A stretch of 64,000 bases of DNA from Octopus sinensis (taxonomy: Eukaryota), in NCBI RefSeq assembly GCF_006345805.1, contig NC_043016.1, positions 27,466,001 to 27,530,000 of the forward strand. The letters are read 5' to 3'. Position 1 is the first letter of the stretch. Every line of letters begins with the position of its first letter. The notes below the pieces were generated by a model that did no database searches, was not told the origin of the DNA, and saw nothing but the letters and a program-made list of their open reading frames with translations. Of this stretch, positions 5,203 to 47,284 are shown piece after piece. The position numbers and the translations under genes were made by a program.

Positions 5203-5428
5203 GGTTTTCTTAAAAATATGAGAGAGAAAGAGGTGCTAAAAAAAGATGGAGTGGAAGGAATTATGGTAAGTGTTTTCAAGAGGAAGGGCCTATGGTTGTG
5301 AAAAACTCTGCCTCAACATACTTTTGTCTGAACTATACAATGATGATTATGAAAATGAATTTGTAAACTGACAGAAATGTTTGTCCTGTGAGTGTTACAT
5401 TTAAAGTATGTCTTTTGTTTATTTCCAG

Positions 5429-5568
5429 CAAGAAGATCTCGTTGCCTTGGGTAAAGTTGTGCTTGCTTTGGCATGCAATTCCATCATGGCAATACAGCGT
5501 GAGCAGGTTTCGAACTCGCTGGAGCTTGTGGCACGCAATTATTCAACAGATTTGAAGAATTTAATCTT
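5429..5568 (+). CDS. PAN3: PAN3 internal exon (end of pseudokinase domain): QEDLVALGKVVLALACNSIMAIQREQVSNSLELVARNYSTDLKNLI(L)
   Basis: Acceptor tttccAG at 5427-5428 and donor GTatgt at 5569; phase 0 start, phase 2 end. The peptide matches the recalled PAN3 motif QADLISLGKVVLALACNSL...NYSSDLKNLIL. Upstream exons are not in this window. Confidence 0.96.
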
Positions 5569-6337
5569 GTATGTTTTCTTTTGTTTACCTTTTTTGCTTC
5601 ATTATGTGGTTTAAAAGACTGGATGTTCAGCATGTTTGTTAATAGTGTTTGATGTTTGCTTTAATGGAAACTATGTTGTTTATAATACACATCCCAACAC
5701 TTAGCATTCTACTGTCTTCCACCACACACCCACCCACCACTTCAAATGCCTCATGTCTGAAGCATCCACCTCATCAACACTACTTTTATCTTATTCCAGC
5801 TCCATCCTAGTTACTCTCGACCACTCTTCAACCCAATCCTTACAATTGTTGTGTACCTCCTCTCTCCTTACATGTTTGCTGTCTCTTATTCCCCCATACA
5901 TTCTTACAATTTCTACTTACAAAAACCCCTGATCCCTCTGTCACACTCATTCTTATCTACTTGTACCTTGAGGATCCATCCTGACACCTCATCACAACCA
6001 TTTTTACTTTTCTTCCACTCCACCCAATCTTTACAGCAAGAAACCTGGCCCCTTCTCTCACATTTTAACCCCCTATCTCCTAGTTTAAAGCCGCCTTTCT
6101 CTCTACTGTTTCCCACGCAATAAAGTAGTACCTTTGTCATGCAGGCTGCATGGCACCTCACTAGTGCTGATGTCATGAAAATGGTACCCTGTGTGCTTTG
6201 TAAAGTGCTTAGCATTAGGGAGGACATCTAGCCATAGAAACCATACCAAAACAGACAATGGAGCAGGATGCAATCTTTGGACCCACTGGATCCTGTTAAA
6301 CCATTCAACTCGAGCCATGAGTTAAATGATGATGATG

Positions 6338-9155: not shown

Positions 9156-9285
9156 ATACCTAATGGGATCACAACGACGACAGCGCAGTGTTAACGATAT
9201 AATGCCAATGATTGGTGCAAGGTTTTACACACAGCTTGATGCTGCGCAACTACGCAGTGATGTTGTTGAGAATGAGTTGGCAAAG
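9156..9285 (+). CDS. PAN3: PAN3 exon (coiled coil): (L)YLMGSQRRQRSVNDIMPMIGARFYTQLDAAQLRSDVVENELAK
   Basis: Acceptor ttgcAG at 9154-9155 and donor GTaagc at 9286. The 130 nt continue the frame (tt+a = Leu). Contains the PAN3 SVNDIMPMIGARFYTQLD motif. Confidence 0.97.
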
Positions 9286-10102
9286 GTAAGCTTGCTTAAA
9301 CTTCGATCTAAAAGTTGAGATATTTTACATGAAAAATATCTCAACTTTTAGAGCGAGAAATCTCCCTCTCTCTATCTGTCTCCAAGTTCTCTCTATCTTA
9401 TGCTTTCCCCTCTGTACATATATATTTCACTCTCTCTATGTATATCTATATCTCTCATACATGATGCTCATCCTCTCTTTTGATATGACGTGTAATTGTT
9501 CCCATTTTGTTTAGAACTTCTTATTTGTAACGTTTTTACTTTCATTTTATGATAGGCGGGCGTGAAGAAGCGGACGTCCAGAGGCGGGACGGCGCTTCGA
9601 AGCATCGTTCCCGGGTCGGGTCCGTGCGTTCACCGCGACGCTCGCGTCTGGCGTTCCCGCTCTGACTCAGGTGTAGCAGGCGGCCGGGGACCCAAAAGAT
9701 GGCGAACCAAATTTGAAAATTTTCACTTAATTTTAAAATTTCAAAATCTGTAACAACAGGAAAGATCTCTCTTTTTGTCAGTGACTTTTCTCATTGGAAA
9801 CTTTCATACTCTCTTGCTCTTTCTCTATATGTATATCACTCACACTGGGTGCATGTCTGTGCGTGTGTATGCAAGTGTGTAAAGATCATTAGAGCAACAG
9901 TGAACTAAGAAAAATCTTTACATCTATGCACTACATGGAAAAACAAAAATTTATAAATTGCCCCAAATGGTGCAGATATCAGTTCTGATCAAGAGGCCTT
10001 TCCATCAGAGAAGGCATGGTCTGACATGGAATGAAAAAAAAAAATGAAAGAAAGTCATTCTATTGTGAAAATTGCCTGGTAACAATGGGATATTCAGCTA
10101 GT

Positions 10103-10142
<40 letters not shown>

Positions 10143-10143
10143 G

Positions 10144-11166
10144 AACTATGGTTGCAGAACAAACAAATACAAGGTCATCCACGTAACATTTCATATCTCG
10201 AACATTTAATCACATAATGCTTTTTCTTTCACACAGAATATACATGTATAACATCACGGAAGATGAAACATAACTCATCAATACAAGCATATAAGAAAAT
10301 GCAAGAAAAATGTGTGAATACAGTTCATCACGGTTAAAAGTTAATACTTTAGCGATTAAGAAATATATATTTTTTTAAAAACATTACAACATCTAGAATA
10401 ATAAATACGTAAAAATATAAAGTAATATATAAATATATAGATATATTAAAAATATATAAAAATACATATGTATAGGAAGCATATAAATAAGTAATATATA
10501 AACTTTTTTTTTTACTGCTTTAATTCTTTCATTTGGGCTGGTCTAAGCATGACTTCTTAAATAAGAAACCACGCAATACTGGTTAAGGAGGTCTCGCCCT
10601 GGTACGTGATGTCTGTCTCTCTATTTTTTCCCCTGACGAAGGAGTAGTTATTGTGATGCACCCTCGTGCATTAAATACAGTGATGTACCCCTGAAATGGC
10701 CATAGGGAATGTAAATATGGTTTCTTTTTTGCTTGGACACTGGCTTTTAACTATAGGTTTCCCTTATCTGAAAAGTAATTTTTAATGAAAAAAATTTCTA
10801 AACGATGAACTTTTATCTTACCTTATATATTATATATTACTTATTTATATGCTTCCTATACATATGTATTTTTATATATTTTTTATATATCTATATATTT
10901 ATATATTACTTTATATTTTTACGTATTTATTATTCTAGGTGTTGTAATGTTTTTAAAAAAATCTATATTTCTTAATCGCTAAAGTATTAACTTTTAACCG
11001 TGATGAACTGTATTCACACATTTTTCTTGCATTTTCTTATATGCTTGTACTGATGAGTTATGTTTCATCTTCCGAGATGTTATACATGTATATTCTATGA
11101 TTAAATGTTCGAGATATGAAATGTTACGTGGATGACCTTGTATTTGTTTGTTCTGCAACCATAGTT
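10144..11166. repeat. Long inverted repeat (arms 10144-10500 and 10831-11166, 330-bp spacer), PLE-type
   Basis: The arms are reverse complements with about five substitutions and one ~21-nt indel by eye. The spacer carries a hammerhead motif. Confidence 0.95.
10628..10709 (+). ncRNA. Type I hammerhead ribozyme motif
   Basis: Stem I TTCCC (10628-32) / GGGAA (10705-09); core CTGACGA 10633-39; stem II AGGAGTA/TACCCCT (one mismatch); GAAA 10693-96; palindromic stem III TGGCCA; U10703, A10704 (AUA site). Confidence 0.75.
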
Positions 11167-11253
11167 TAATATATTTGTCTCATTCAATTGAGCACTTCTA
11201 TAGCAGTCCTATTAAACATTTTGTTCAAGATAAGAAACAATCACTGTATTATT

Positions 11254-11310
<57 letters not shown>

Positions 11311-11317
11311 ATGTGTG

Positions 11318-11460
11318 TGTGATATATCTTGACTTTGCAAAGGCCTTTGATAAAGTCAGTCATGGACTGATATGTCACAAGCTGTGTGACTTCAGCATAG
11401 TTGGAAAACTTGGAGAATGTCTACATGACTTTAAAAAATAGAAGTTGGGCAGTCATAACA
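11318..11460 (+). mobile_element. CR1/L2-like RT fragment
   Basis: DIYLDFAKAFDKVSHGLICHKLCDFSIVGKLGECLHDF. Confidence 0.75.
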
Positions 11461-12810
11461 ATGTCTTTAGTTTATACTTGTATGTCTAGATCTCTACTCC
11501 TACACCCATTCTGCCCTGTCAAGCATTCTCCCTAATTCATCTAATCCCACCTTCCCTAATGTCAATAATTTCTCTGTCTGTTGATCTGCTCAGCTACTGT
11601 GATCATGTGAGAGCAGAATCAACAGATGCTATGTTCCTTTCATTTGTCATTTTCATCATCATTTCTTCCTACAATATTTTCACTGACTACCTCCTTTCTA
11701 TGATTCCCTATGTCTCACCCTCTCTTTGCCTAGTCTTCATATTAACACTGCTTATATCTGCTTCCATTTTCAACTTGCTCTCATATCTGTCATGACACCC
11801 CTTTCACTAAAGCTCTTCACTTATGTACTTTACATTTCACTCCCTACTACTCCTACACCTTGTACATCATCCTCTGCTTCTATTTCTCTCACCTTACATC
11901 TACTCCATATAGGTATTTCTCATCAACCACGCCACCTCTGTTCATCACTTGCCATATTTACCTCTACCCTCATTTCCAGTCATCTGTTGTTCTCCTCTCA
12001 CACTCATACATAACTTCTCACTCTCCCCCCCAATCCACTGTCTGTGTCTTCTCATATGCTCACCTTGTACCTTGAGGATTTGTTTTGCCCCAACTCCCAT
12101 CATTACCATCTTTATCTTCCCAGCTATTCCCACTCACTCATATATGTGGAGTAGCCACGTATCTTCTCTTTAACAAGATACTTATTCTTGTCCCTCTATC
12201 ATACTTTAGCCCCTGAATAACTGGCATAAAGCCCCCCTCCCTCACTGAGTTGTGAAGTCTTTTTCTCTGTTTTTTTCTTTTTCTACCGTGTAGGGTACTT
12301 AGCAACCTCACCAGTGCTGGTGGTACAAAAAAAATGCACCCTGTACATTCTGTAGAGTAGTTGGCATTAGGAAGAGCATTCAATTGTAGAACTTCTGTCA
12401 AAGCAGACACTGGAGCATGATGCTGTCCTTGGATCCATTGGATCCTGCCACACCGTCCAACCCATACCAGCATGGAAAACAGACATTAAATGATGCTAAT
12501 GTTGATGTTCAACGATGATATCGTCATCCTTTAACACCCATCATTCATGCTGACATAGGTTGGGTGGTTTCACAGGTTCTGACAGAATCTAAGGACTACA
12601 TAGTGCTCCAATGTCTCATTTGGCAAGGTTTCTACGGTTGCATGCTCTTCCTTACACCAACCCTTTTGCAGCATGTATCGTGTGTGTGTGTGTCTTTTTT
12701 TTTTTTTTGTGACATCATCAATAGTAACACAAAAATATGAGTTTGTGTGTGTTTATATAAACCTATCTGCAGTCATGTCTAACATCAATTCCTTGTCATT
12801 TTCTTTCCAG

Positions 12811-12875
12811 GAAGTTGAAAACGGCCGCCTGTTTCGACTCCTTTGCAAGTTAGTTACGATATTGGAAAGACCCGA
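12811..12875 (+). CDS. PAN3: PAN3 exon: EVENGRLFRLLCKLVTILERP(E)
   Basis: Acceptor ttctttccAG at 12809-12810 and donor GTaag at 12876; 65 nt. Matches PAN3 EVQNGRLFRLLAKLGTINERPE. Confidence 0.97.
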
Positions 12876-14211: not shown

Positions 14212-15266
14212 CCCTTTCGTTACCAAACCGCCCGCAAAAAATTTTGGTTAATGTGACCAAACCACCCAAAGCCGCCCGAATTTACCTATTCATATTTAAA
14301 TGAGAATATCAGAGCAAATCTCTTTAGTACATTCGTGAAAATACGTATTATACTTCGTAAAGAGTTCAACTACAGTTTTGTACAAAAATCGAAGTGTAAT
14401 TTTAATTCCGTGAATTTGGGGAGATTTTTTTCCGAAATTTGTTCCTATTGTGTTTTCAAAATTTGTAATTCTGACAAAAAATGGATACGAATTTCATTAT
14501 ATCAAGCAGCGAGTCAGAATTCGAAGGATTTTCTACTGAAGACCTTCATAAATCTAACTCTATGACTGAAAAAGAAAAGCATGTGGTATTTGATAATGAA
14601 TCTGATGTTTCATTTTCCAAAAGTGAAAACAGTGAATCCGAGAGCTCCGACAGCGATAAAGAAAACGAATTGGCACCTGAATGGAGTGAAAATTTAAAAA
14701 CTGTTTCTTTCGGTGATTTTTCTGAAGAAACTGGACCAAGCCACAGACTTTCCCAGAAGAGTAAAGCCTTAGACTATTTCTTTTTACTTTTTCGAATGAG
14801 CCTATTTGAAATCATTACGGCGGAAATGAACCGTTACGCTAAATGTAAACGAAACGAAAGAAAGGATAGTTAGTGGTTTCCCACAACCTTAAATGAAATT
14901 AAGACTATTTTGCCATAAATATTATTATGGGTATCAGAAAGTTACCCAGAATAACAAATTCTATCGTAAAATTTTGTTGTATACCCAATTGAATATTAGC
15001 GATGTTTGAACAAAATTTTAATAATTTTATATTTTGTTGAATTTACCTGTATCTACCTGCAATTAGAGTCACGTTATGACAAAAATTATAGTATAGAATT
15101 GGTTGAGAACATTTCATTAAATTATCTTCCAAAATTCACGTTAATATATTGATAAATAAAAAAGTTATAGTTGTTTAATGAAACCAGACTAAATTTATGA
15201 TTATGTTAGAAATTAATTGAAACACATAAGGGGTGAATTTTGTTCAGAAATATAGTAACGAAAGGG
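14212..15266 (+). mobile_element. Internally deleted piggyBac element with N-terminal transposase fragment (ORF 14481-14873)
   Basis: TTAA TSDs at 14208-14211 and 15267-15270; perfect 12-bp TIR CCCTTTCGTTAC / GTAACGAAAGGG. The ORF has an acidic N-terminus then FSEETGP...LDYFFLLF...FEIITAEMNRYA, continuing past a stop as WFPTTLNEIK / IIMGIRKLP. Confidence 0.93.
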
Positions 15267-17654: not shown

Positions 17655-17793
17655 ATTCTCAATTGATGCTTCCTGGTCAGAAACAGGAGATCGATACATG
17701 TTAAAACTCTTCCGTGACTACATCTTCCACCAAGTTGATGAACATGGCACACCATGGGTAGATATGGCACATATCGTGGACTCGTTAAACAAG
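17655..17793 (+). CDS. PAN3: PAN3 exon (C-terminal knob): (E)[46 protein letters not shown]
   Basis: Acceptor ttacAG at 17653-17654 and donor GTatgt at 17794; 139 nt in frame. Contains the WSETGDRY and LKLFRDxxFHQV motifs. Confidence 0.97.
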
Positions 17794-18150: not shown

Positions 18151-21100
18151 CTCTTCTAAATGGCATACATCCACTTGTCTCTGCCCCTGCATTTCCACAA
18201 TCCCATCAGCCCTACCTTTTATCTGCCTGCGTTAATTGTTGCAGCCCTAAAGTTTCGGAGTATCATAGAAGTCAGGGTGTATCATTAGTGGGAAGGTGGT
18301 TTAGTGATTGGTTCATATTTGTATGAATGTGTCCACACCTGTGAGGGATAAGAAAGATTGTGGGGCAGTTTCCCAACAGTTGGCAGATTTACATGCATTA
18401 TTATTAGTAGGTTTGTCCTTGCATTTGATTTACCATCTTTCACACTTGCTGCATCTACCACAAAAATAAATAATAACTGATTAATTAACTAGTAAGTATC
18501 CCCTTAGCTCATAAAAATTCACTTACATTTCCGATGTAAGTGAATTAAAGGTCTTTCCAGACAGAATATATTGATAAAAAGTGAAAAAAACAAGCAAGCT
18601 AGTCAGTACTTATGTTGAAGAAGAGTCATGTAAAAATTCAACTGAAACTCTCTGTGTGTGTGTGCACGCGCGTGTGCATGCTTGTATGTTTGTATCTTGT
18701 TTGATATTGCATGATAGTTGTAAGTCAGTGTCACCGTCATAAAAACAGTGTCATTCATTTCCAATATTCTCTGAAAATATATCTGGCTATGGGGAAATAT
18801 TACCTTGGAAAGTGAGTTAGTGAAAATCCACCTCGATAAACTCTTAACTGACACATGCAAGTATGAGAAGTTGAACATGAAAATAATGATAGATGGGTAT
18901 GTGTGTATGTATATATATATATATATATATATACACAACAGGCTTCTTTCAGTTCCCATCTACCAAACCCGCTCAAAGGCTTCAGTTCAGCCCAGAGCTA
19001 TAGTAGAAGGCACTTGCTTGATGCCACACAGTTAAAATAAACCTAAAACCATGTGTTTGGGAAACAAAATTCTTAACTATACAGCTGTGCCACACACAGA
19101 GTAAAAAAAAACACTGGCCTAAGTTATCACACAGTGGGATTGAACCCAAAGCCCTGTGGTTGGGAAGTGGTCTTCTTAGCCATACAGCCAACCCTGTGCC
19201 TTGGAAATAAGTATTGTCTCAAACGTTATAGAATTTATAAAAGTATTAGTATTCATTGATCAATAGATGAGTCAGTGGCTTATGACTGAAAAGATAGTTT
19301 TATGCTTTTTTTTTTTTGTGATAGTATAGATCTTGGGATTGTGTCTAATTTTTCCAATTAGCCCAATCTTCCTCAGTGGCTTGTTGATTAATAAGAGACC
19401 TCATGCAGTTCCGGAGGTACTGTTTTCTGACTCTTGTGTAGTTATTGCCCTTGAGAAGGGGTGCTGCTCTAGGCAGTGCTTTGGCTCATTGATTTTTTTT
19501 TGTTAATTACAGGTGAAGGTCATTTGCACATGTGTAATTATATATGTACACACCATTTCAGCATGTCATCATTTAACATGCCTGTTTCCATAGTGGTATA
19601 GATAGGATGGTTTGACAGTAAACAATGAGCCAGAGGGCTGTACCAAGCTCCAATGTTTGCTTTGGCATGGTTTATACATGTGGATGCCCTCCCTAATGCC
19701 AACCATTTCACAAAGTGTACTTTTTCATGGCATCAGCACTGGTGAAATCACCAAGAATTTGCAAGACAAGACCCTCAGCTAAAGCATGTAATGTGGAAAG
19801 TATGATAGAGGAACAGGGTCAAGTATCTTGCTAAAGAGGCTCTCCAGTCCCAGCTAGAAAGAGAATGATGATGAGAGCATATCCTCGACATAAATGTGAG
19901 AAAGAGAATAAGGATAAAAGATAGAAAAAGTTGGTATGTAAGGTTGCGAAAGTGTGAATAGAATGTGACATGTGGGCACAGTAAATATCAGATGCGAGTA
20001 GAGTGAAGTCAAGGGAATAGGAATGGGTCATAGAGGAGAGAGAAGGTGATGAGAGACAGCAGGAGGAATACAATGTGAACTGTATCCCCACTTTTTCTGT
20101 CTTATCAGGGTATTTTTACTCAGTCTTCTAAGCTGTTTTATCAGCTATTCTCCTGTATTTGAGCTTTCCTTTATTTCTAAAATAAAAATACCAGTTCACT
20201 CAACACTTTAATGTTTCTTTATATGTTCTCACATTCCAAAAGTTAATATTTAGCATTATAAAAAATAGTATCTGTTGTCACGGGTCATTTAACTTAAAGG
20301 TACAGAGTGCTCAACCAAATTTTGAGATGTACATTGTTTGATTTTTCTCTAGTGGGCTTGGTAGCCACTTTTTTTTTCCATTTTTTAAGGGTATTTTTAC
20401 CCTATCTTCTAAGCTGCTTTCACAGCTATTTGCCTGCATTTCAGATTTCCTTAATATCTAAAATAAAAATACCAACTCGCTCATCACTTTGATGTTTGTT
20501 TATAATGCCATGTTGATAATTATTGAGAGATTTCTCTCTACATGGAACCATTTGTAGCTCTGTTTACTCCAAAATGAAGAATATTTATCCACCTCCACCA
20601 ATGCTGTGTTGTGCACTCATTCTTACTGTTCAATGTATTTTTTAATATGCTGGCCATTGATAAAATTTTTTCGAAAATTTTTATCCTATATTAGATATAC
20701 ACACACACACATACACATGGCACAAGTGTGGCTGCATGGCAAGAAGTCTGCTTCCCAACCACATGTTTCCAAGTTCAGTTCTACCATGTGTCATCGTAGG
20801 CAATTGTCTTCTTCTATAGTTCCAGGCTGACCAACGCTTTGTGGATGGATTTGGTTGGCAGAAACCGAAAGGAGCTTGTCGCGTGTGTGTCTGTGTGTGT
20901 GTTATAGATGTCTGCATATTTGTGTGTGCATTACAGTTTCCTTTCCTTGTCATCATGTCATAGTGGTGAGCAAGTGGTCATCATTATATGAGTAGTGTTC
21001 TTCAGTTTCCAGACAAAATCTGTTTAGCCATGGGAAGATATTGCCTTACTTGGAAATAGGCGAGGGTTGGAGGCAGGAAAGGCATCCAGTCATTCAAAAT

Positions 21101-21301: not shown

Positions 21302-21448
21302 CTCGATGCAGGTGTGATGGACAAGGTGACCTTGATGTCCAGAGACGAACAGACGATGTTGGTGGTATCTTATGCAGAGTTAAAACAGAGCTTCGAAACT
21401 GCGTTCACAGAGCTGCTGACTGCTACACAGCACACAAATTTTGCATAA
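21302..21448 (+). CDS. PAN3: PAN3 last coding exon: LDAGVMDKVTLMSRDEQTMLVVSYAELKQSFETAFTELLTATQHTNFA*
   Basis: Acceptor ttcacAG at 21300-21301 and stop TAA at 21446-21448. Matches the PAN3 C-terminus LDAGVPEKISLISRDEKSVLVVTYSDLKRCFENTFQEL. Confidence 0.97.
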   Translation, partial: LDAGVMDKVTLMSRDEQTMLVVSYAELKQSFETAFTELLTATQHTNFA

Positions 21449-21541
21449 ATATGCTAAGAATATTTGGAATATATTTTAAATATGGTGGGATTTTATGTAT
21501 TTTCAGGTGTGTGGGTATATGTATCTGAGTGTATGTGTGTG

Positions 21542-21604
<63 letters not shown>

Positions 21605-21829
21605 TACAGGCATGTATGTTTATATATGTGTATAGTACTTACATATCTATCTATATATATATATATATAATATATATAAATTAGAAAAAAACCACCTTTT
21701 ATCAATCAATAATGAAAAATTAAATTTTTCATTATTGAATTATATAATATATATATATATTATATTTTGTGAAATTTGATTTAGTATTTCTAAATTGAAT
21801 TTTTCCCTATAAGTTTGGAATAATATTCA

Positions 21830-21942
21830 CTCATATAATATATATATGTATATATATATGTATATATGTATATGTATATATATATATGTATATATATATG
21901 TATATGTATATATGTATATATATATGTATATGTATATATATG

Positions 21943-21980
<38 letters not shown>

Positions 21981-22106
21981 TATATATATGTATATGTATA
22001 TGTATATATATATGTATATGTATATATATATGTATATATATATATATGTATATATATATGTATATGTATATATATATGTATATGTATATATATATGTATA
22101 TATATG

Positions 22107-22141
<35 letters not shown>

Positions 22142-22215
22142 GTATATATATATATATAGATAGATATATGTATATGTATATATATATATAGATAGATAGA
22201 TATATGTATATGTAT

Positions 22216-22246
<31 letters not shown>

Positions 22247-22271
22247 GATAGATAGATATATATATGTATAT

Positions 22272-22303
<32 letters not shown>

Positions 22304-22571
22304 AGATAGTAGATATATGTATATGTATATATACATATATATACATATATATATAATATGTATACATATATATAATATAGATAGATAGATATATGTATAT
22401 GTATATATACATATATATTATAATATATATATTATATGTATACATATATATATATATATATAGATAGATAGATAGATATATGTATATGTATATATACATA
22501 TATATTATATATATATATATGTATATATATAATTATATTATATATATTATAATATATATATATATGTATAC

Positions 22572-22654
<83 letters not shown>

Positions 22655-22809
22655 ACATATATATATATATATATAGATATATATATATATATATATATGT
22701 GTATACATATATACATATATATATATAGTGTATACATATATATACATATACATATATATATATAGGTTATACATATATATATACATTATATATATATATA
22801 TATGTATAC

Positions 22810-22885
<76 letters not shown>

Positions 22886-23245
22886 ACATATATATATAGA
22901 TATTATAATATGTATACATATTATATATATATATATATATGTGTATACATATATATATAGATATATATATATTGTATACATATATATATATATATATGTA
23001 TACATATATATATATATATATATATGTATACATATATATATATATATGTATAATATATATATATATATGTATACATATATTATATATATATATATATATA
23101 TGTATACATATATATAATATATATGTATACATATATATATATATATATATATGTAATACATATATATATATATGTATACATATTATATACATATATAGTA
23201 TACATATGTATACATAATAACATATATATGTATACATATATATAC

Positions 23246-23292
<47 letters not shown>

Positions 23293-23800
23293 ACATATAT
23301 ATATGTATTACAATATATATATATATATATATGTATACATATATATATGTATACATATATATATATGTATATATGTATACATATATATATGTATACATAT
23401 ATATATATATATATATACATATATATGTATATATATATATAATATGCAATATACATTGTGGTGTGTATGTGCCTATAGATGTATGGATATATATATTTGT
23501 AATTTTGTATGTATGTTATTTATGTATAATTTTTACGTGTGTATGTATGTCCATATATATATATATGTATATATGTGTGTGTGCGTTTATGAGTATATGT
23601 GTATATAGTATGTATGTATATATATTATATGTTTATGTGTGTGTATGTATATACGTGTGTGTATTTGTGCGTGTGTGTATATATGTATATATATTTGCAT
23701 AAATATGTGTATATGCATATATATTTGTGTATATATATATATGTGCGTGTGTGTATGTAAATATACATAATACGTACATTATATGTATGTATGTGTATAA
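21830..23800. repeat. ~2-kb compound (TA)n microsatellite with recurrent GTATAC / TATG / TAGA interruptions
   Basis: Directly visible; it produces the Y/I-rich pseudo-ORFs in the ORF track. Confidence 0.97.
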
Positions 23801-23970
23801 AAAAAGCCACATTAGTGAAATATTTTAAGATATGTGTCTTTTTCTGTAGAAGTTTTGTAGATTCATGTGATTTCATTGGGGTTTTTTCATATCAGAAAAT
23901 GGAAAAAAATGGGATGTGATGTAAGCAGAAAAGAAGATATCTATGTGTGGTGTGTGTGTGTGTGTGTATG

Positions 23971-24003
<33 letters not shown>

Positions 24004-24887
24004 ATATATAATATATATATATATATTTGTATATGTGTATGTATGTGTGTGTGTGTGTATATAAATATATGTGTGTTTATACGTGTGCGCACACACACAC
24101 ACATACACACACTTGTCTCCATTTTGTTTTTCAAATTTTTAATACTGTCTCTTGCAACTCCTAACTGAAAAGTCACCATTTCTTGTGTGACGAGGCAGGA
24201 TTTAAACTCAGAATGTAAAAGTACCGGAAAAAATTCCTGTAAATATCCCATCTGATGCTAAAAGAATTCTGCCGTTCCACAGCCATTGTCCAGTACTTAT
24301 TTTATCCACCCTGATATCATGAGAGGTTTATCTTTGTAGAATTTGAACTCAGAGTTTGGAGATTCAGAGAAAATTACATAAGGTGTTCTAACCAATAATC
24401 TAACAACCATGCCTGTACGCCTAGATGTATATAGGTGCAGGCATGGCTGTGTGGTTGATAAACTTGCTTCCCGGTCATGTGTTGTTGGATTCAGTTCCAC
24501 TATGTGGCATCTTGGGCTTTCTACTATAGTCCCATGTTGACCAAGACCTTGTGAGTGTATTTCAATGACGGAAACTGAAAGAAGCATATTGTGTGTGTGT
24601 GTGTGTGTTTCTACCTTTGTCTTGATATCACATAATGGTTGTAAATAAGTATTGCTATCTTACAAGCAGTGTTGTTCATTTCCAGTTTTCCATAGAAGAC
24701 ATGCCTGACCATGGGAAAATATTATCTTGCTTAGAAACAGTAAGGGCATCCAGTTGTTGAAAATCTGCCTCAGCAAAGTCTGTCTGACTTAGGCCAGCGG
24801 CAAGCTCGGGAAACTGGACATTAAATTATGATAAGGATGATGTTTGTGTGTGTGTGTGTGTGTATACATGGACACACACTCATACTA

Positions 24888-27886: not shown

Positions 27887-28278
27887 GGATGGATGGAAGC
27901 ACTCCGTCGGTTACGACAACGAGGGTCCCGGTTAATCCGAATCAACGGAACAGCCTGCTCGTGAAATTAACGTGTAAGTGGCTGAGCACTCCACAGACAC
28001 GTGTACCCTTAACGTAGTTCTCGGGGATATTCAGCGTGACACAGAGAGTGACAAGGCTGGCCCATTGAAATACAGGTACAACAGAAACAGGAAATAAGAG
28101 TGAGAGAAAGTTGTGGTGAAAGAGTACAGCAGGGATCACCACCATCCCCTACCGGAGCCTCGTGGAGCTTTATGTGTTTTCGCTCAATAAACACTCACAA
28201 CGCCTGGTCTGGGAATCGAAACCGCGATCCTATGACCGCGAGTCCGCTGCCCTAACCACTAGGCCATTGCGTCTCCTC
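27887..28278 (-). mobile_element. Full-length tRNA-derived SINE
   Basis: A box TGGCCTAGTGG and B box GTTTCGATTCC on the minus strand; (CCAT)n tail; 10-bp TSD tatggaatct (27877-86 / 28279-88). Confidence 0.92.
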
Positions 28279-29538: not shown

Positions 29539-30646
29539 TGTACTTCTTTCAGTTTCCATCTTTCAAATTTACCCATATGGCTTTGGTTCTCCCAGAGTTA
29601 CAGTTGAAGACTATGTCCGGTAAGTTCATCGTCATCAATCCACCACAGGAAAAGTTCACCGTCATCAATTCACCTTTTTTTTTTTTTTTTTTTTCAGTAA
29701 AATAGTTTTTAACTGTTAATAGTGAGATACTATGAATATATTTTCTCAGTAAACTTTCCTCGCGGTGAACTTACCTAGAATCTTTGAAGGCACTCGTCTA
29801 AGGTGATATGCTGTGGGGCTCAAACTGTGCTTAGAACGCAGACTTCTTAACCATTCAGCCATGCTTGTACCTGTAAATATTTATATACCACTCTGTGTAA
29901 TGTCACATGACATCACATGAGGGAAATGACAATGTCTTAATGACATTGGATGTGTGTGTGTGTGTGTGTGTATGTGCATATGTGTAACTAACATGTTATC
30001 TCTCTTTCATCCTTCTATTTACTGTATCATCATTTCTAATCTGCTGTTCCACACTATCAGCACCCCCCACCCACTCCAGGTACACCTACCCCGTTCTTCC
30101 CAATTCACCTCATAGCTTGAAGATTCATTCTGATACTTCATCACTATTTTACCTCTCTTTTCAGTTCCACCCAGTTACCTTGCCCTCTCTTCAAAAATTT
30201 GTGTAGACATGTAAGCTCCTCTACAGCAAGGAACCTGTCCTGCTCTGCCCCTTTTTTGTTCATATTTTACTCCCCTTTCTACTCCTTATTCTCCAAGCAT
30301 AAAGTTGTCCCCATGCACATTCTTGGATCATAGTCTTGCAAGTTTGTATGGTAACCGCACTAGTGCTGGTGATACAAAAAAAAAAAATCTTCCATTACAT
30401 ACTGTAATGTGGTTGGTATTAGGAAGGGTATTCAGCAGTGGAAACCATGTCACAGCAGACACTGGAGCATGATGTAATCCTTGGACCTATCAAATCCTGT
30501 CAAACTACTCAGCCCATTATAACAAGGGTGTTAATGATGGTGATGATGATAATTTCTGTACATACTCTACATTTTAGGTAGCCCATAGTGAAACTCTTCT
30601 GGCTGTAATTTATCATATATTTCTGATATTTGTTTGAAACTATATA

Positions 30647-31509
30647 CAGTCAACTCTCGCTACTATGCCACCCTGCGGGACTGAGCCAAAGTGGCATAGT
30701 ACCGAGGGTCTGTTATCTAAACACTACATAACCAAAAATGTACTGAACATACGAATAAAAATTCATAGGGTAGGAAGTAAGGCCAATAAGAAGTTCAATG
30801 CAATGGTAAAAAGAAGACATCCAAGTTTATTAAGTTCAGATTGCTTTTAGTTAATCCCGAAGCTCTCAAAAATTGTCGGCTGACGCATCTTCTTTCGGCG
30901 GATTTAATTCATTTCGTTGTCTAGCCTATCACACACCTGCATGATGCTGGGTTTTCCACTGCTCTGCTGCTGCATAAACTTTCGGATAGTGCTCCATGCT
31001 CTCTGGGCATCTGCAAACGAAACGTATTCCTCTTCCACAATTAGCTCGTTGTCTTCACTTTCCACCGGCTCTTCGTTATGCATTACCTCCTTTGCTATTT
31101 CTTCTAGAGTGAAACATGTCGGACAATATAAGGGGCGGTAACTTGTATCAGATATTACTAATGATACGAGGGGCCCGACAATAACGTTTTTCGCAGCATC
31201 GATAATCTCCTTCTTTTCCTTCAGCGTAAACTCAGTCCGCTTGCGTTTCTGAGCTGACATTGTGTGCTACTTTCTGAACTTTTCCACAAGATTACAAATA
31301 CGAAATGTACAAAATGTAGGAGTACAAAATTTTGAAAAGTTGCGTGCGCTTCAGTTTACAAGTGGCATAGTAGCGAGAGTTGAGGGTGGCATAGTAAAAT
31401 TTTTTTGTTTATTATTTGGCCGGGACCGCGCAAAACTGGCATAGTAGCGAGAGTGGCATAGTAGTGAGGTGGCATAGTAGCGAGGTGGCATAGTAGCGAG
31501 AGTTGACTG
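30647..31509 (-). mobile_element. Tigger/pogo non-autonomous element with fused mini-ORF (30904-31260)
   Basis: TA TSDs (30645-46, 31510-11); 26-bp TIR CAGTCAACTCTCGCTACTATGCCACC; subterminal GGCATAGTAGCGAG repeats. ORF start KRKRTEFTLKEKKEII (CENP-B/psq N-terminus) is joined to an acidic Tigger-like C-terminus. Confidence 0.92.
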
Positions 31510-33946: not shown

Positions 33947-34916
33947 CCATTTTTAACAGCATATTAAGGTGCACTTTTATTTTCTAAAAGTTTCAAAAAA
34001 TTACATCTTGTGTTGCTGTATTATAGATGAGAGACAGTATTGTAGAGTAGGGAGCTCACATGATATTTGTTACTAATAGTAAAATATTGCAAACAAGCCA
34101 AAATATTAGTTTGTTAGCATAAACTTACCAAAGCTTACCAAAAACATGTCAAAAGTTATGTAGAAAGGTCACATCATCTCATTATACCTTCTTCCTCAGC
34201 ACACATAGGATAAAAAAGGGTACCCCCCCCCTTAGGTCATTAATGACTGGCCTGCCACAGTTACACAGATCATGAAAGCCAAAAATACAAATTTTACATT
34301 TTAATATGGCAGTTTTCTTGACCCAAAATATAAACAATTATATGGTTGATCTGAAAGATGATAAAACTAAGATACAGTACTCCTATAGCATAGCTTTTTC
34401 TGATTAATTTATGGTCTCATTCTTTATCCCAGTTATAGTGTCACAAAATTGTATTTACTTGCACAGAATCATGCATTTTCCCTGACATAACTCATCGTCA
34501 TCGTCATCGTTTAATGTCCGTTCTCCATGCTAGCATGGGTTGGACGGTTCGACCGGGGATCTGGGAAGCCAGAAGGCTGCACCAGGCTCCAGTCTGATCT
34601 GGCAGTGTTTCTACAGCTGGATGCCCTTCCTAATGCCAACCACTCCGTGAGTGTAGTGGGTGCTTTTTACGTGCCACCTGCACAGGTGCCAGGCGAGGCT
34701 GGCAACGGCCACGGTCGGATTGGTGCATTTTACGTGCCACCGGCGCTGGCATCGGCCACGATTCGGACAGTGCTTTAACTACTTTAAAATATCTCTCAAT
34801 AAGTGTATGATCAAACATACTACATTTGTTTTGTTTTTTCCCCCCCCTACAAAATATACTTATGAAATAGGGGTGCATCTTTTGTGAGGGAGCATTTTAT
34901 ATACCAGCAAATATGG
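33947..34916. mobile_element. Tc2-like MITE interrupted by a retroposon at ~34490-34785
   Basis: Degenerate left TIR TA|ccatttttaacagcatattaaggtgcac and right TIR ...ataccagcaaatatgg|TA. The insert has a (GAC/GAT)n tail and a possible taact duplication. Confidence 0.7.
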
Positions 34917-41199: not shown

Positions 41200-41890
41200 A
41201 GCAAAAAAATAATTGTTTTATCTAAGGAAATGAAGCTTTAAGTGTCTGAACATGCCAATAATGTTTTAGCTAGTTTCTCTCAGGAAATTTTTATCCTGCA
41301 GTTTCCCCTTGAGCTGGATAACCAAGACCTGTTAAAATCAAGCTTCTGAAAATCATAGTGGAAGAAAACTTAAAGCAAACTGCAGGAGAATTAGCAACGT
41401 TGTTCAATTCAAACATTTTGATCATAAAAGATCTTCCTGAACTAGGAAAAATGTCTAAACTTGATCAATGGGCTCCTCATCATCTGATTGCTTCACAGCT
41501 TAATCAAAGAATTGTCCTCTGCCTATCATTGAAGCATTGCCTTGCTGTGAAACCTTCCCTGGGTAGAATCATGATGAGTGATAAAAAGTGGGGTCTCTTT
41601 AATCATATCCAATGTAAACAACAATGCAAAAGTAGAATCTGTCCCCAAACAAGGACTACACCTATTTAAAAGTTATGTTCTGTGTTTGGTGAGATATGAA
41701 GAGTGTCATCTATCATGAAACAGTTAATGAGAAGTATCGTTGTCAGTTGGAAGCATTGCATAAAAATTTGCAGAAATAGCACCCATCATTGGTCAATCAG
41801 AAAGGGATATTACTTTTACATGGTAATGCAAGATCACATATTGCCCAAGTCACTCAGGAAAAGATGGGATTATTTTACGAAGAATGAGGG
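41200..41890 (+). mobile_element. Mariner transposase remnant
   Basis: LGKMSKLDQWAPHHL (WVPHEL), RIMMSDKKW (first Asp region), KVMFCVW, ILLLHGNARSHIAQVTQEK; frameshifted. Same family as 13190-13490. Confidence 0.85.
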
Positions 41891-45249: not shown

Positions 45250-45740
45250 TGTTATTGAAGTAAGGTTTGCACCTCTCCAATACTCTCCGCTTGATGTAAT
45301 CCATTGTGCTTTTCATAAACAACTATACATACCTTACTAAGGCTGTGACATTTTGCTTCTCCTAGATATCAAAGGAGGATATTTAGTTGTTAAATTTGAT
45401 CCTGGAGGGACCTTCTGTTGCGCCCACATATTTCAGTTTGTCTGTCTGCTGCTGGGCACTACCTCCACCTCATAATTGATGGTTTCTCTGTCGTGTTGGC
45501 TGTCAAGTGGGCACATGGTGTTGCCTCAGTACAAACATCCTACCTATCTATTGAAATTTTCTTTATACTATGTGCACATTTAAAAGGTAATGTCTGTACA
45601 TTATTTACATTATTTACAATTGATGGATATTTGTCCTCATCTTGTTTGATGTTAACACAACGTTTTGGCTGATATACCCTCCAGTCTTCATCAAGTGTCT
45701 TGGGGAAATTTCAAACCTGGGTTCTCATTCCCAAGGTATT
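45250..45740 (-). mobile_element. Penelope-like element GIY-YIG endonuclease remnant
   Basis: Minus strand CPLD...INYEVEV...VGATEGP..KFNN.ISSF...MKSTMDYIKRRVLERCKPYFNN; ~69 nt nearly identical to 43314-43382. Confidence 0.8.
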
Positions 45741-45743
45741 TTT

Positions 45744-45966
<223 letters not shown>

Positions 45967-46300
45967 CAGGTCACTGCTTGGAATCAAATACGGGATCCGT
46001 TATATTGTTTTGTATTCCAAATATAGTTCATATACTTAGATAGTATGGAATAATGGAATCCTGTATTGATGAGCATAGTATATGAACTATATTTGGAATA
46101 CAAGACAATATAACGGATTTTACATATGAATATTATGGATTATTACAGAAGACTAACCAAGGAAGTATATATGGATTTAAAGACTCTCATCAAAAGCAAT
46201 AATTTTAAATTTATCTTTCAAATAAACACCATATCATAGTATTACTTCAAATTTAAAAAAAAAAACTACCATTCGATATGTTATACAAAATTCAAATTTT

Positions 46301-46394
46301 ATATCTCTGAAGAGCAGAAGAGTTGTCTATAAATGCTTATCAATATAGGATTTCATTATAGGGACAGCACTTCTGTGAAACGATCGTAAGATGT
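46301..46394 (+). ncRNA. Type I hammerhead ribozyme motif
   Basis: Stem I ATATCT/AGATGT; CTGAAGA 46307-13; stem II GCAGAAG/CTTCTGT with extension; GAAA 46377-80; palindromic CGATCG; U46387, A46388 (GUA site). Confidence 0.78.
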
Positions 46395-46706
46395 TTTAAA
46401 TACTTAATTCAAAACTTTTAAACTGCCATATGCATTATATATTTATACTTATACATATTTACATATATTTTTATATATATATTATATATTTTTAATACAA
46501 CAATTATTTTACACAATTTTACAGAATTTTCTAATATTGATTTCCTGATATTAATAATAATATATTATTAAAATATATATATATATATAATCTCTTGTAT
46601 TAAATATATAAATACTTTAATAGTATTAATACTTTGATACAATAGAGCACTCAATATAAATTCAGTATATATTCTCATTGAATATATTTAACTAAAGATT
46701 TATACA

Positions 46707-46770
<64 letters not shown>

Positions 46771-46874
46771 CATTATTGGTGAATTGAAGTTTCGCCATGG
46801 GCTCTTAGGAGCTTAGTTCGATTTGTTTTTGCTCCGCCTCTGTTCTGTTTTTGTTTTTCCAACGGATTTCCTTT

Positions 46875-46963
46875 TTTCTTCCTGAAGAGAAAGACACAAT
46901 ATGGTCCCATTATTCAATCGGATTTTGGTAATTTGTGCCTTTCGAAACACGTGTAGAATGAAA
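46875..46963 (+). ncRNA. Type I hammerhead ribozyme motif inside a 21-bp inverted repeat (46769-46789 / 47002-47022)
   Basis: Stem I TTTCTTC / GAA(T)GAAA; CTGAAGA 46882-88; stem II GAAAGACACAA/TTGTGCCTTTC (10 of 11 paired); GAAA 46944-47; palindromic CACGTG; U46954, A46955 (GUA site). Confidence 0.8.
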
Positions 46964-47180
46964 TAAAACGATTTCTGTTCAATCTGCGTTCAGCTCCATT
47001 TCTTCAATTCACCAATAATGTTTTAATTTCAATTATCCGCACCAACGCACGGTTGCAACGCCAGATGGTTGTACCTCCAACCGTGCTGTTTACTGCTGTA
47101 TTTTTGCTACTAAGGTATCGGTTAACTTTTGATTAATCTACTACAAGATTATTCATCTTTCTATTTCACATAAATTATAT

Positions 47181-47284
<104 letters not shown>

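What the first reader, a model, noticed from the sequence alone, without database searches (positions are those of the whole stretch)
10144..11166. Hammerhead ribozyme in the loop of a ~335-bp dsRNA stem, sense strand of a PAN3 intron
Seen: near-identical inverted arms enclose a complete type I hammerhead core (CUGACGA, GAAA, AUA site) with stems I-III assignable. Established: Penelope-like elements carry minimal hammerheads with palindromic stem III that can cleave as dimers, and they often form inverted repeats; coleoids edit dsRNA heavily via ADAR. Inference: every PAN3 pre-mRNA would carry a long ADAR/Dicer-type stem plus a potential self-cleavage site after 10704. Such a structure could influence intron turnover, splicing or circularisation in a gene that itself controls mRNA decay. 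Activity is untested.
Basis: partly seen in the sequence, partly recalled or inferred. Interest (0 to 1): 0.8.

Follow-up and report, generated by a model that had tools for sequence, protein, structure and literature searches.

The report
Transposon-borne hammerhead ribozyme in PAN3 intron
A young, roughly 1.1-kb mobile-element insertion in an intron of an octopod PAN3 gene carries a genuine hammerhead-ribozyme motif between two near-identical inverted arms; it looks like ordinary Penelope-like retroelement debris, not a regulator of the gene.

Summary
Arms 10145-10502 and 10830-11165 are 98.2% complementary, with one 21-nt indel. They enclose 327 unique bases containing a complete type I hammerhead core, with predicted cleavage after 10704. 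The locus lies on the sense strand of a PAN3 intron (9286-10810 region; intron 9286-12810).

The motif is not chance. A general descriptor finds three such motifs in the window (10633, 46307, 46882) and one in the Argonauta hians PAN3 locus. All four have a long helix II (53-63 nt) and a different 6-nt palindromic helix III followed by UA. Shuffles give 0.0034 such hits per window, and 719 decoy cores give none. Rfam sees none of the four.

The best reading is a 5'-truncated or non-autonomous Penelope-like (retrozyme-like) insertion into a (TA)n microsatellite. The inverted arm would be a by-product of integration and the ribozyme the element's own processing motif. No RT/GIY-YIG gene was found, so that link is inferred.

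The single copy has no partner in cis for dimer cleavage, and its active fold is a minor conformer. Efficient cleavage of PAN3 pre-mRNA is therefore unlikely. A long hairpin RNA is predicted from sequence. Editing, small RNAs and any effect on PAN3 are untested. I rate it a new member of a known kind, of modest interest.

The parts
9184..9285 (+). PAN3 exon upstream of the intron (..RSVNDIMPMIGARFYTQLDAAQLRSDVVENELAK), donor GTAAGC at 9286
10109..10144 (.). (TA)n microsatellite ending in AATG. This is the left flank and putative target; the same (TA)n-AATG recurs at 11257-11313, a possible target-site duplication.
   Evidence: the duplication is an inference
10145..10502 (+). Left arm, an inverted copy of the right arm (358 nt, GC 0.23). 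It contains a 21-nt segment (about 10211-10231) that the right arm lacks.
10503..10829 (+). Unique central region (327 nt, GC 0.36), which forms the loop of the hairpin
10628..10632 (+). Hammerhead helix I, 5' strand (UUCCC)
10633..10639 (+). Hammerhead core, positions 3-9 (CUGACGA)
10640..10692 (+). Helix II, a 53-nt imperfect hairpin. The basal stem is 7 bp with one A.C mismatch. The 10.1-11.1 pair is A-U, not the usual G-C. The inner hairpin is AUGCAC-CCUC-GUGCAU.
10693..10696 (+). Hammerhead core G12 A13 A14 A15.1 (GAAA)
10697..10702 (+). Helix III palindrome UGGCCA. In a monomer this gives 2 bp plus a GGCC loop. In the predicted homodimer it gives an 8-bp intermolecular helix.
10703..10704 (+). 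U16.1 A17; the predicted cleavage site is after 10704
10705..10709 (+). Hammerhead helix I, 3' strand (GGGAA)
10830..11165 (+). Right arm (336 nt, GC 0.24)
11166..11256 (+). Unique 91-nt stretch between the right arm and the right (TA)n. It may be a one-sided extension that belongs to the insertion.
   Evidence: the assignment is an inference
11257..11313 (.). Right (TA)n microsatellite ending in AATG
12811..12875 (+). Next PAN3 exon (EVENGRLFRLLCKLVTILERPE), acceptor ..ttccag ending at 12810
46307..46388 (+). Separate insertion carrying a second hammerhead motif of the same architecture: CUGAAGA, a 63-nt helix II, GAAA, CGAUCG, UA.
46882..46955 (+). Separate insertion carrying a third hammerhead motif: CUGAAGA, an 11-bp helix II with G10.1-C11.1, GAAA, CACGUG, UA. 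It sits inside a small inverted-repeat element (arms 46766-46789 and 47002-47025) between two (TA)n tracts.

Best explanation
The locus is a lineage-specific insertion of about 1.1 kb (10145 to about 11256) into a (TA)n microsatellite in a PAN3 intron. The inserted element is a short hammerhead-bearing retroelement. Most likely it is a 5'-truncated Penelope-like element, or a non-autonomous (retrozyme-like) derivative mobilised by one.

The + oriented copy (10503-11165, plus a possible extension) carries the element's own type I hammerhead. The left arm is an inverted partial copy made during integration, for example by the self-priming or inverted 5'-truncated-copy mode described for these elements.

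In the element's own life cycle the ribozyme would cut multimeric or paired transcripts. Two copies would pair through the palindromic helix III (UGGCCA) to form a double hammerhead.

In the host, every PAN3 pre-mRNA carries the element in sense. The arms should therefore fold into an AU-rich hairpin of about 330 bp. The single ribozyme, lacking a partner in cis, should cleave slowly or not at all. The net effect on PAN3 is probably neutral.

Shown here: the repeat, the motif and its non-randomness, the gene context, and the predicted folds. Inferred: the retroelement class, the integration mechanism, the dimer mode, and the low activity.
For: Anatomy and gene context.

The motif is real:
- Three hits in the window plus one in Argonauta.
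- Shuffles expect 0.0034 palindromic hits per window.
- None of 719 decoy cores gives a palindromic hit.
- The four copies carry four different 6-nt palindromes and different helix I and II sequences, yet 96% of cells pair, against 36-56% when partners are slid. Eleven of 13 pairs show compensatory changes.
- The four elements share no sequence outside the motif.

Fit to published Penelope-like hammerheads: helix II larger than usual, helix I of 4-5 bp, palindromic 15.2-16.2 and loop 3, dimer action, low in vitro activity (PMC4209133; PMC6765202).

Fit to Penelope-like insertions: an inverted 5'-truncated copy, a one-sided tail, and a (TA)n microsatellite bias (PMC8557442; PMC3846280).

Dimer: the predicted homodimer is -60.7 kcal/mol against 2 x -24.1, with an 8-bp intermolecular helix III.

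Young and lineage-specific: the arms are 98.2% identical, and the Argonauta intron has no similarity to the element.

Not an artefact: the arms differ by 6 substitutions and a 21-nt indel, and they enclose unique sequence.
Against: - No RT or GIY-YIG coding remnant is linked to any of the four motifs. tblastn with the Poseidon_Ac protein finds nothing in the window or in L001.
- The hammerheads sit 225-550 nt from the 3' (TA)n boundary. In characterised Penelope-like elements the motif spans the pLTR/ORF junction at the very 3' end.
- The extension is 91 nt, not the published 30-40 bp.
- Two reported family hallmarks are missing in the simplest register for this copy: the G10.1-C11.1 pair and the unpaired base between positions 9 and 10.1.
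- Helix II is far longer (53-63 nt in total) than the published 6-8 bp.
- No Rfam hammerhead model matches.
- No other copy of this particular element could be retrieved.
- Pairing in helices I and II of the four copies was partly imposed by the descriptor that found them.
Confidence: 0.65

Rival explanations
1. The carrier is a foldback or MITE-type DNA transposon with long terminal inverted repeats, inserted at a TA-rich site. It happens to carry, or has captured, a hammerhead. On this reading the inverted arms are the element's own termini, not an integration by-product.
For: - The arms end at matching termini (AACTATGGTTGCAG...) and the immediate flanks are ATAT on both sides.
- The third motif also lies between short inverted arms of 24 nt.
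- No reverse transcriptase is nearby.
Against: - The arms make up two thirds of the element and are nearly identical, as expected of a fresh duplication.
- The second motif (46307) has its inverted repeat upstream, not around it. The Argonauta copy has none.
- Both the 10.6-kb and the 46.9-kb elements have 90-160 nt of unique sequence between the right arm and the right (TA)n. This suits a one-sided extension better than transposon termini.
- In animals, hammerheads are known from retroelements.
Confidence: 0.17
2. The hammerhead and hairpin have been co-opted by the host. Self-cleavage and/or ADAR or Dicer processing of the stem would tune PAN3 pre-mRNA splicing, intron turnover or circularisation.
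For: - The element is in the sense orientation, inside the intron, 858 nt from the donor and 1645 nt from the acceptor.
- A few intronic hammerheads conserved in amniotes are thought to act in mRNA biogenesis (PMC7229834).
Against: - The insertion is young (98.2% arm identity).
- It is absent from the Argonauta intron.
- It has no dimer partner in cis; the other motifs lie more than 35 kb away, beyond the PAN3 stop, and carry different palindromes.
- The active fold is disfavoured in its native context.
- Hammerheads of this type are slow in vitro.
- In the vertebrates studied, retrozymes are depleted from introns, which suggests such insertions are tolerated at best (abstract).
Confidence: 0.05
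3. The motif at 10633-10709 is a chance match and/or the inverted repeat is an assembly artefact.
For: No curated Rfam hammerhead model matches. Only one assembly was available.
Against: - Shuffles and decoy cores both argue against a chance match.
- There are three further motifs of the same unusual architecture.
- The arms differ by 6 substitutions and a 21-nt indel and enclose 327 unique bases. Foldback chimeras produce perfect palindromes.
Confidence: 0.04

Closest known systems
Minimal type I hammerheads of Penelope-like elements (Cervera & de la Pena 2014, PMC4209133; Lunse, Weinberg & Breaker 2017, cited in PMC6765202)
   Same: - Type I topology and an intact CUGANGA / GAAA / UH core.
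[quoted passage not shown]
- Helix II enlarged.
- Very short helix III with a palindromic sequence that allows a double-hammerhead dimer.
- Dispersed single copies of highly variable sequence.
- Association with inverted repeats.
   Different: - Helix II here is a 53-63-nt hairpin, not 6-8 bp.
- This copy has A10.1-U11.1, not G-C, and no unpaired base after A9.
- The motif lies hundreds of bases from the 3' boundary.
- No RT/GIY-YIG gene is linked to it.
Naiad Penelope-like elements with 'HHR_half_core' (Craig et al. 2021, PMC8557442)
   Same: - Naiads show a (TA)n insertion bias.
- They form inverted 5'-truncated copies and one-sided tails.
- They occur in Octopus and other cephalopods.
- In eight Naiad cases the two core halves were noted 35-50 nt apart, close to the 53-63 nt seen here.
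   Different: - Naiads are reported to lack canonical hammerheads and to be long inactive in cephalopods, whereas this insertion looks young.
- No Naiad sequence was available to compare, so the link is only a lead.
Metazoan non-LTR retrozymes (Cervera & de la Pena 2020, PMC7229834; Li et al. 2026 preprint)
   Same: - Short, AT-rich, non-coding elements with one type I hammerhead.
- Helix III of 1-2 bp capped by a palindromic tetraloop.
- Proposed to derive from Penelope-like elements.
   Different: - Retrozymes are tandem repeats of 170-400 bp with canonical 6-bp helix I and 4-bp helix II and loop-loop contacts.
- No tandem copy exists here, and helix II is too long for the classical loop contact.
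Conserved intronic hammerheads of amniotes (de la Pena & Garcia-Robles 2010, as cited)
   Same: A hammerhead on the sense strand of an intron of a protein-coding gene.
   Different: Those are canonical, efficient, single-copy ribozymes conserved across amniotes. This one is a young, repeat-borne, minimal-type motif.
Intronic inverted-repeat hairpins as ADAR substrates (for example inverted Alu pairs; own knowledge)
   Same: A long, near-perfect intramolecular duplex in a pre-mRNA intron, made from two inverted repeat copies.
   Different: Both arms here come from a single insertion event. Editing was not tested.

Membership tests
Hammerhead ribozyme (type I) | Conserved core C3 U4 G5 A6 N7 G8 A9 ... 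G12 A13 A14 A15.1 ... U16.1 H17 | tested here: met
   CUGACGA 10633-10639, GAAA 10693-10696 and UA 10703-10704, read directly and found by the descriptor.
Hammerhead ribozyme (type I) | Three helices around the core, with helix I open and helices II and III closed | tested here: met
   Helix I has 5 bp, helix II is a 7-bp basal stem extended into a hairpin, and helix III has 2 bp plus a GGCC loop. The unconstrained fold of the 103-nt piece keeps helices I and II. The full hammerhead fold is +0.9 kcal/mol above the MFE.
Hammerhead ribozyme (type I) | Match to a curated covariance model (Rfam Hammerhead_1, Hammerhead_3, HH9, HH10, Hammerhead_II) | tested here: not met
   No hit at the gathering score over the whole window, nor at E<=10 for 10480-10850 or 46250-47050. 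The long helix II probably defeats these models.
Hammerhead ribozyme (type I) | Helices kept by compensatory changes among relatives | tested here: inconclusive
   Across four motifs, 96% of cells pair and 11 of 13 pairs show changes on both sides. However, helices I and II were partly required by the search that found the copies. The palindromic helix III was not required for three of the four.
Hammerhead ribozyme (type I) | Site-specific self-cleavage giving 2',3'-cyclic phosphate and 5'-OH ends | not testable with these tools
   Needs a transcription and cleavage assay, or mapping of RNA ends.
Hammerhead ribozyme (type I) | Loop 1 / loop 2 tertiary contact that gives fast cleavage at physiological Mg2+ | tested here: inconclusive
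   Helix II is about 21 bp long, and helix I has no defined loop. The classical contact therefore looks impossible, but no 3D test was run.
Penelope-like-element minimal hammerhead | Helix II larger than canonical and helix I of 4-5 bp | tested here: met
   Helix I has 5 bp. Helix II has at least 7 bp at its base, longer than the published 6-8 bp.
Penelope-like-element minimal hammerhead | Palindromic positions 15.2-16.2 and loop 3 (competent for dimer formation) | tested here: met
   UGGCCA in this copy; CGAUCG, CACGUG and CAAUUG in the other three. The predicted homodimer forms an 8-bp helix III.
Penelope-like-element minimal hammerhead | Conserved G10.1-C11.1 pair, and an unpaired base between positions 9 and 10.1 | tested here: not met
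   Here 10.1-11.1 is A-U with no unpaired base. A G-C pair appears only if A10640 and U10692 are both left unpaired. The 46882 motif does have G-C.
Penelope-like-element minimal hammerhead | Location in the pseudo-LTR of an element that encodes RT and GIY-YIG endonuclease | tested here: not met
   tblastn with Poseidon_Ac finds no hit in the window or in L001. Truncated and non-autonomous copies would also lack the gene, so this neither proves nor excludes descent from such an element.
Penelope-like element insertion | Inverted 5'-truncated copy next to the main copy, a one-sided extension, and a microsatellite ((TA)n) target | tested here: inconclusive
   An inverted arm, a 91-nt one-sided unique stretch and flanking (TA)n-AATG on both sides are all present. 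However, the extension is longer than the published 30-40 bp, and 10% of window positions have (TA)n on both sides within 600 nt by chance.
Non-LTR retrozyme | Head-to-tail tandem repeats of 170-400 bp, each with a canonical type I hammerhead | tested here: not met
   There is no direct or tandem copy of the loop or the arm anywhere in the window. The covariance model finds no neighbouring copy.
MITE / foldback DNA transposon | Terminal inverted repeats at the exact ends, flanked by a fixed-length target duplication, with many homogeneous copies | tested here: inconclusive
   Inverted arms and ATAT flanks are compatible with this. No other copy was available to define the ends.

The most novel reading that the evidence does not exclude
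Octopod genomes may hold a very abundant class of hammerhead ribozymes that has not been annotated. Its features are a helix II hairpin of 50-60 nt and a 6-nt palindromic helix III, and it is invisible to Rfam. Four motifs in 98 kb extrapolates very roughly to 10^4-10^5 copies per genome. The class would be carried by short elements that target (TA)n tracts. These may be the Naiad-type Penelope-like elements that are currently described as lacking hammerheads. Intronic sense copies embedded in long hairpins, like this one in PAN3, could then be cleaved and/or edited in vivo.
Probability: 0.15. Interest if true: 0.6.

Novelty: new member of a known kind. Interest (0 to 1): 0.35.

Why it matters
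For PAN3 itself it probably does not matter. The insertion looks young and neutral, and the ribozyme is of a slow, dimer-dependent type.

The wider point concerns annotation. A simple descriptor found four hammerhead motifs of one unusual architecture in under 100 kb of octopod DNA, and Rfam models found none. Ribozyme counts for cephalopod genomes that rest on Rfam scans, such as 235 'hammerhead 1' loci in the giant squid, may therefore miss a large class.

If the carriers prove to be Naiad or Neptune-type Penelope-like elements, the claim that some of these clades lack hammerheads would need refining. Sense-strand intronic copies inside long hairpins would also be convenient natural substrates. 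They could be used to ask whether these minimal hammerheads cleave at all in vivo, which is still open for Penelope-like elements.

Tried and rejected
- Rfam at the gathering score and at E<=10 on both hammerhead regions gave no hammerhead, only chance-level hits.
- blastn of the loop, arm, extension and the other element bodies against the window and L001 found no further copy. The four elements share nothing outside the motif.
- A covariance model built from the four motifs found only its own seeds. The weak hits at 51151-51208 and 28346 were read and are not hammerheads.
- Exact look-ups of two ORFs inside the element in public assemblies found nothing on record.
- The tRNA-derived SINE idea was dropped: ARAGORN finds nothing.
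- tblastn with the Poseidon_Ac protein from the PMC11167929 supplement gave no RT or endonuclease remnant. ORFs near the Argonauta motif are LINE-like, not Penelope-like.
Lunse et al. 2017 and Pyatkov et al. 2004 are not held.
- I ran no further search on Penelope-like proteins. The top 120 hits would be vertebrate and could not be steered towards cephalopods.
- The retrozyme reading was rejected for lack of any tandem copy.
- The assembly-artefact reading was rejected because the arms differ and enclose unique sequence.

Full report
**1. The observation**

The repeat finder reports two collinear inverted pairs: 10232-10501/10830-11099 (270 nt, 98%) and 10136-10218/11092-11174 (83 nt, 95%). 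I aligned the left arm with the reverse complement of the right arm. They form one arm pair, 10145-10502 and 10830-11165, with 330 matches, 6 substitutions and a single 21-nt segment present only on the left. The arms are very AT-rich (GC 0.23). The 327-nt centre (10503-10829) is unique and has GC 0.36. Folded as RNA, 10145-11165 gives one giant hairpin: MFE -556.9 kcal/mol, with 331 of 358 left-arm bases paired with the right arm. The arms differ from each other and enclose unique sequence, so a foldback assembly artefact is unlikely.

**2. The hammerhead**

Read directly:
- helix I: UUCCC 10628-10632 pairs with GGGAA 10705-10709
- core: CUGACGA 10633-10639
- helix II: 10640-10692
- GAAA: 10693-10696
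- palindrome UGGCCA: 10697-10702
- U16.1 A17: 10703-10704, so cleavage would follow 10704.

Helices II and III are closed and helix I is open, which makes this type I. The basal helix II is AGGAGUA/UACCCCU, 7 bp with one A.C mismatch. It extends into a hairpin of about 21 bp. The unconstrained fold of the isolated 103-nt piece keeps helices I and II. The full hammerhead fold is only 0.9 kcal/mol above the MFE in a 91-nt context. No Rfam hammerhead model matches, either at the gathering score or at E<=10.

**3. Is it chance?**

I wrote a general descriptor: CUGANGA; helix II of at least 4 bp with at most one mismatch and a loop of up to 60 nt; GAAA; 0-10 nt in helix III; U then H; helix I of at least 3-4 bp.

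- In the window it finds 10633-10704 and, unexpectedly, 46307-46388. With helix I relaxed to 3 bp it also finds 46882-46955.
- In 33.7 kb around Argonauta hians PAN3 (L001) it finds one more, at 28086-28166 on the minus strand.
- All four share an architecture the descriptor did not demand: 53-63 nt between the two core halves forming a long imperfect hairpin, a 6-nt perfect palindrome after GAAA (UGGCCA, CGAUCG, CACGUG, CAAUUG), then UA.
- In 3500 block-wise dinucleotide shuffles of the window, the mean is 0.109 hits of any kind and 0.0034 hits with a palindromic helix III. Three are observed (an earlier run of 400 shuffles is).
- As a control on real sequence, I ran 719 permuted decoy cores over the window plus L001. 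They gave a mean of 0.074 hits, and none had a non-AT palindrome. The true core gave 4 of 4.
- On an alignment of the four motifs, 96% of cells in the three helices pair, against 36-56% when partners are slid. Eleven of 13 pairs change on both sides.

One caveat applies. Pairing in helices I and II was partly imposed by the search that found the copies. The palindromes were not required for three of the four. The motif is therefore a real, recurrent hammerhead class in octopod DNA, although Rfam cannot see it.

**4. Gene context**

Stop-free + strand segments at 5423-5569, 9184-9285, 12811-12875, 17674-17793 and 21302-21445 have proper splice sites. Concatenated, they match human PAN3 (9qtu_A residues 628-829) at E=5e-78 and Drosophila PAN3 at E=3e-72. 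The element lies in the 3525-nt intron 9286-12810, in sense orientation, 858 nt from the donor and 1645 nt from the acceptor.

The closest PAN3 protein retrievable is from Argonauta hians; no Octopus protein was listed. The window is therefore from an octopod, but the species is not verified. The Argonauta locus keeps the same exons (95-97% identity at four of the five exons, 83% at the last). Its orthologous intron is 2130 nt and shows no similarity to the element.

**5. What the carrier is**

Both ends of the insertion abut (TA)n tracts. The string (TA)n-AATG precedes the left arm (to 10144) and recurs at 11257-11313, after 91 unique bases that follow the right arm. This suggests an insertion spanning 10145 to about 11256 with a duplicated target, but that is an inference.

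The third motif shows the same layout in miniature. It has 24-nt inverted arms at 46766-46789 and 47002-47025, with the hammerhead between them. About 160 unique bases follow, and (TA)n lies on both sides. The second motif has a 42-nt-arm inverted repeat upstream and (TA)n downstream. The Argonauta copy lies between TA-rich tracts. About 10% of window positions have (TA)n within 600 nt on both sides by chance, so this association is suggestive only.

The published descriptions fit this picture:
- Penelope-like elements insert 5'-truncated.
- They often carry an adjacent inverted 5'-truncated copy.
- They have an optional extension at one end only.
- They show microsatellite, including (TA)n, target bias (PMC8557442; PMC3846280; PMC8969392).
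- Their hammerheads are type I, with a short helix I, an enlarged helix II and a palindromic, minimal helix III. They act as dimers and are slow in vitro (PMC4209133; PMC6765202).

Several points count against simple membership:
- No RT or GIY-YIG remnant is found in the window or in L001.
- The motif lies 225-550 nt from the 3' boundary, whereas in Poseidon_Ac it spans the very end of the unit.
- The extension is 91 nt, not 30-40 bp.
- This copy has A10.1-U11.1 and no unpaired base after A9.
- Helix II is much longer than published.

Craig et al. noted Naiad elements, which target (TA)n and occur in Octopus, whose two core halves lie 35-50 nt apart and which fail current descriptors. That is a lead I could not test. 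The element is not a retrozyme in the strict sense, because there is no tandem copy. It is not tRNA-derived. A foldback or MITE-type DNA transposon cannot be excluded without more copies.

**6. How it most likely works**

In the element's own cycle, two copies in a multimeric transcript, or two transcripts, would pair through the palindrome. The predicted homodimer is -60.7 kcal/mol against -48.2 for two monomers. It forms an 8-bp intermolecular helix III while keeping helices II.

In PAN3 pre-mRNA there is only one copy. The other motifs lie more than 35 kb away, beyond the PAN3 stop codon, and carry different palindromes. In the native 327-nt loop the hammerhead fold is 5.9 kcal/mol above the MFE, which sequesters the core in another hairpin. 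Pairing probabilities are about 0.16 for helix I, 0.3 for helix II and 0.003 for helix III. Cleavage is therefore expected to be slow or absent.

From my own knowledge of published ribozyme-in-intron experiments, slow cleavage within an intron need not disturb splicing. The hairpin of about 330 bp is the more certain consequence, and it is a textbook ADAR/Dicer-type substrate. Editing and small RNAs were not testable here.

**7. Verdict**

Its suggestion of a role in PAN3 regulation has no support: the insertion is young, lineage-specific and of a weakly active ribozyme type.

I class it as a new member of a known kind, a repeat-borne minimal hammerhead in an intron. There is one side result worth following. 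The long-helix-II, 6-nt-palindrome variant recurs four times in 98 kb and escapes Rfam, so it may be very abundant in octopods.

Noticed in passing
window 46307-46388 (+): A second hammerhead motif of the same architecture: CUGAAGA, a 63-nt helix II hairpin, GAAA, palindrome CGAUCG, UA, and a 6-bp helix I. It lies about 25 kb downstream of the PAN3 stop. A 42-nt-arm inverted repeat sits upstream at 45995-46036/46077-46118, and (TA)n lies downstream.
   Followed up: partly
window 46766-47025 (+), hammerhead at 46882-46955: A third hammerhead motif (palindrome CACGUG, canonical G10.1-C11.1, 11-bp helix II). It lies between 24-nt inverted arms, and the whole unit sits between two long (TA)n tracts (46716-46769 and 47190-47245). 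This is a miniature of the finding's layout.
   Followed up: partly
L001 (Argonauta hians, GCA_054771915.1) 28086-28166 (-): A fourth motif of the same class (CUGAUGA, long helix II, palindrome CAAUUG, UA). It lies 4.4 kb beyond the last PAN3 exon, on the opposite strand, between TA-rich tracts.
   Followed up: partly
window 9531-9700: A CpG-rich island of about 170 nt (GC 0.57-0.62) in the same PAN3 intron, about 450 nt upstream of the element. It has no Rfam match and no obvious ORF. It could be the head of a SINE or another repeat.
   Followed up: no
window 11318-11441 (+): A fragment of a LINE-type reverse transcriptase (..LDFAKAFDKVSHGLICHKLCDFSIVGKL..) begins directly after the right (TA)n-AATG(TG)n. 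The microsatellite therefore sits at the junction of two different insertions.
   Followed up: no
window ~6100-6320, 12140-12490, 19540-19730, 30330-30490, 34500-34780, 62890-63180: A dispersed repeat of about 250-350 nt, on both strands. Its translation keeps producing the pseudo-peptide '..LDALPNAN..'. One copy lies in the same PAN3 intron. It is probably an abundant SINE-like family.
   Followed up: no
window 21500-24050: An exceptionally dense block of (TA)n and TAYA-type microsatellites, with more than 30 tracts of (TA)>=7, begins about 100 nt after the PAN3 stop codon.
   Followed up: no
window 45740-45965: A long alternating (TTG)n/(CTG)n microsatellite immediately upstream of the element that carries the second hammerhead.
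   Followed up: no
window ~61700-61800: A run of 100 N (an assembly gap) inside a repetitive (TCTA/TCCA-like) region.
   Followed up: no
window 14481-14873 (+), 41358-41669 (+), 30904-31260 (-): ORF fragments that look by eye like piggyBac-type, mariner-type and pogo/CENP-B-type transposase remnants. None was checked against a library.
   Followed up: no
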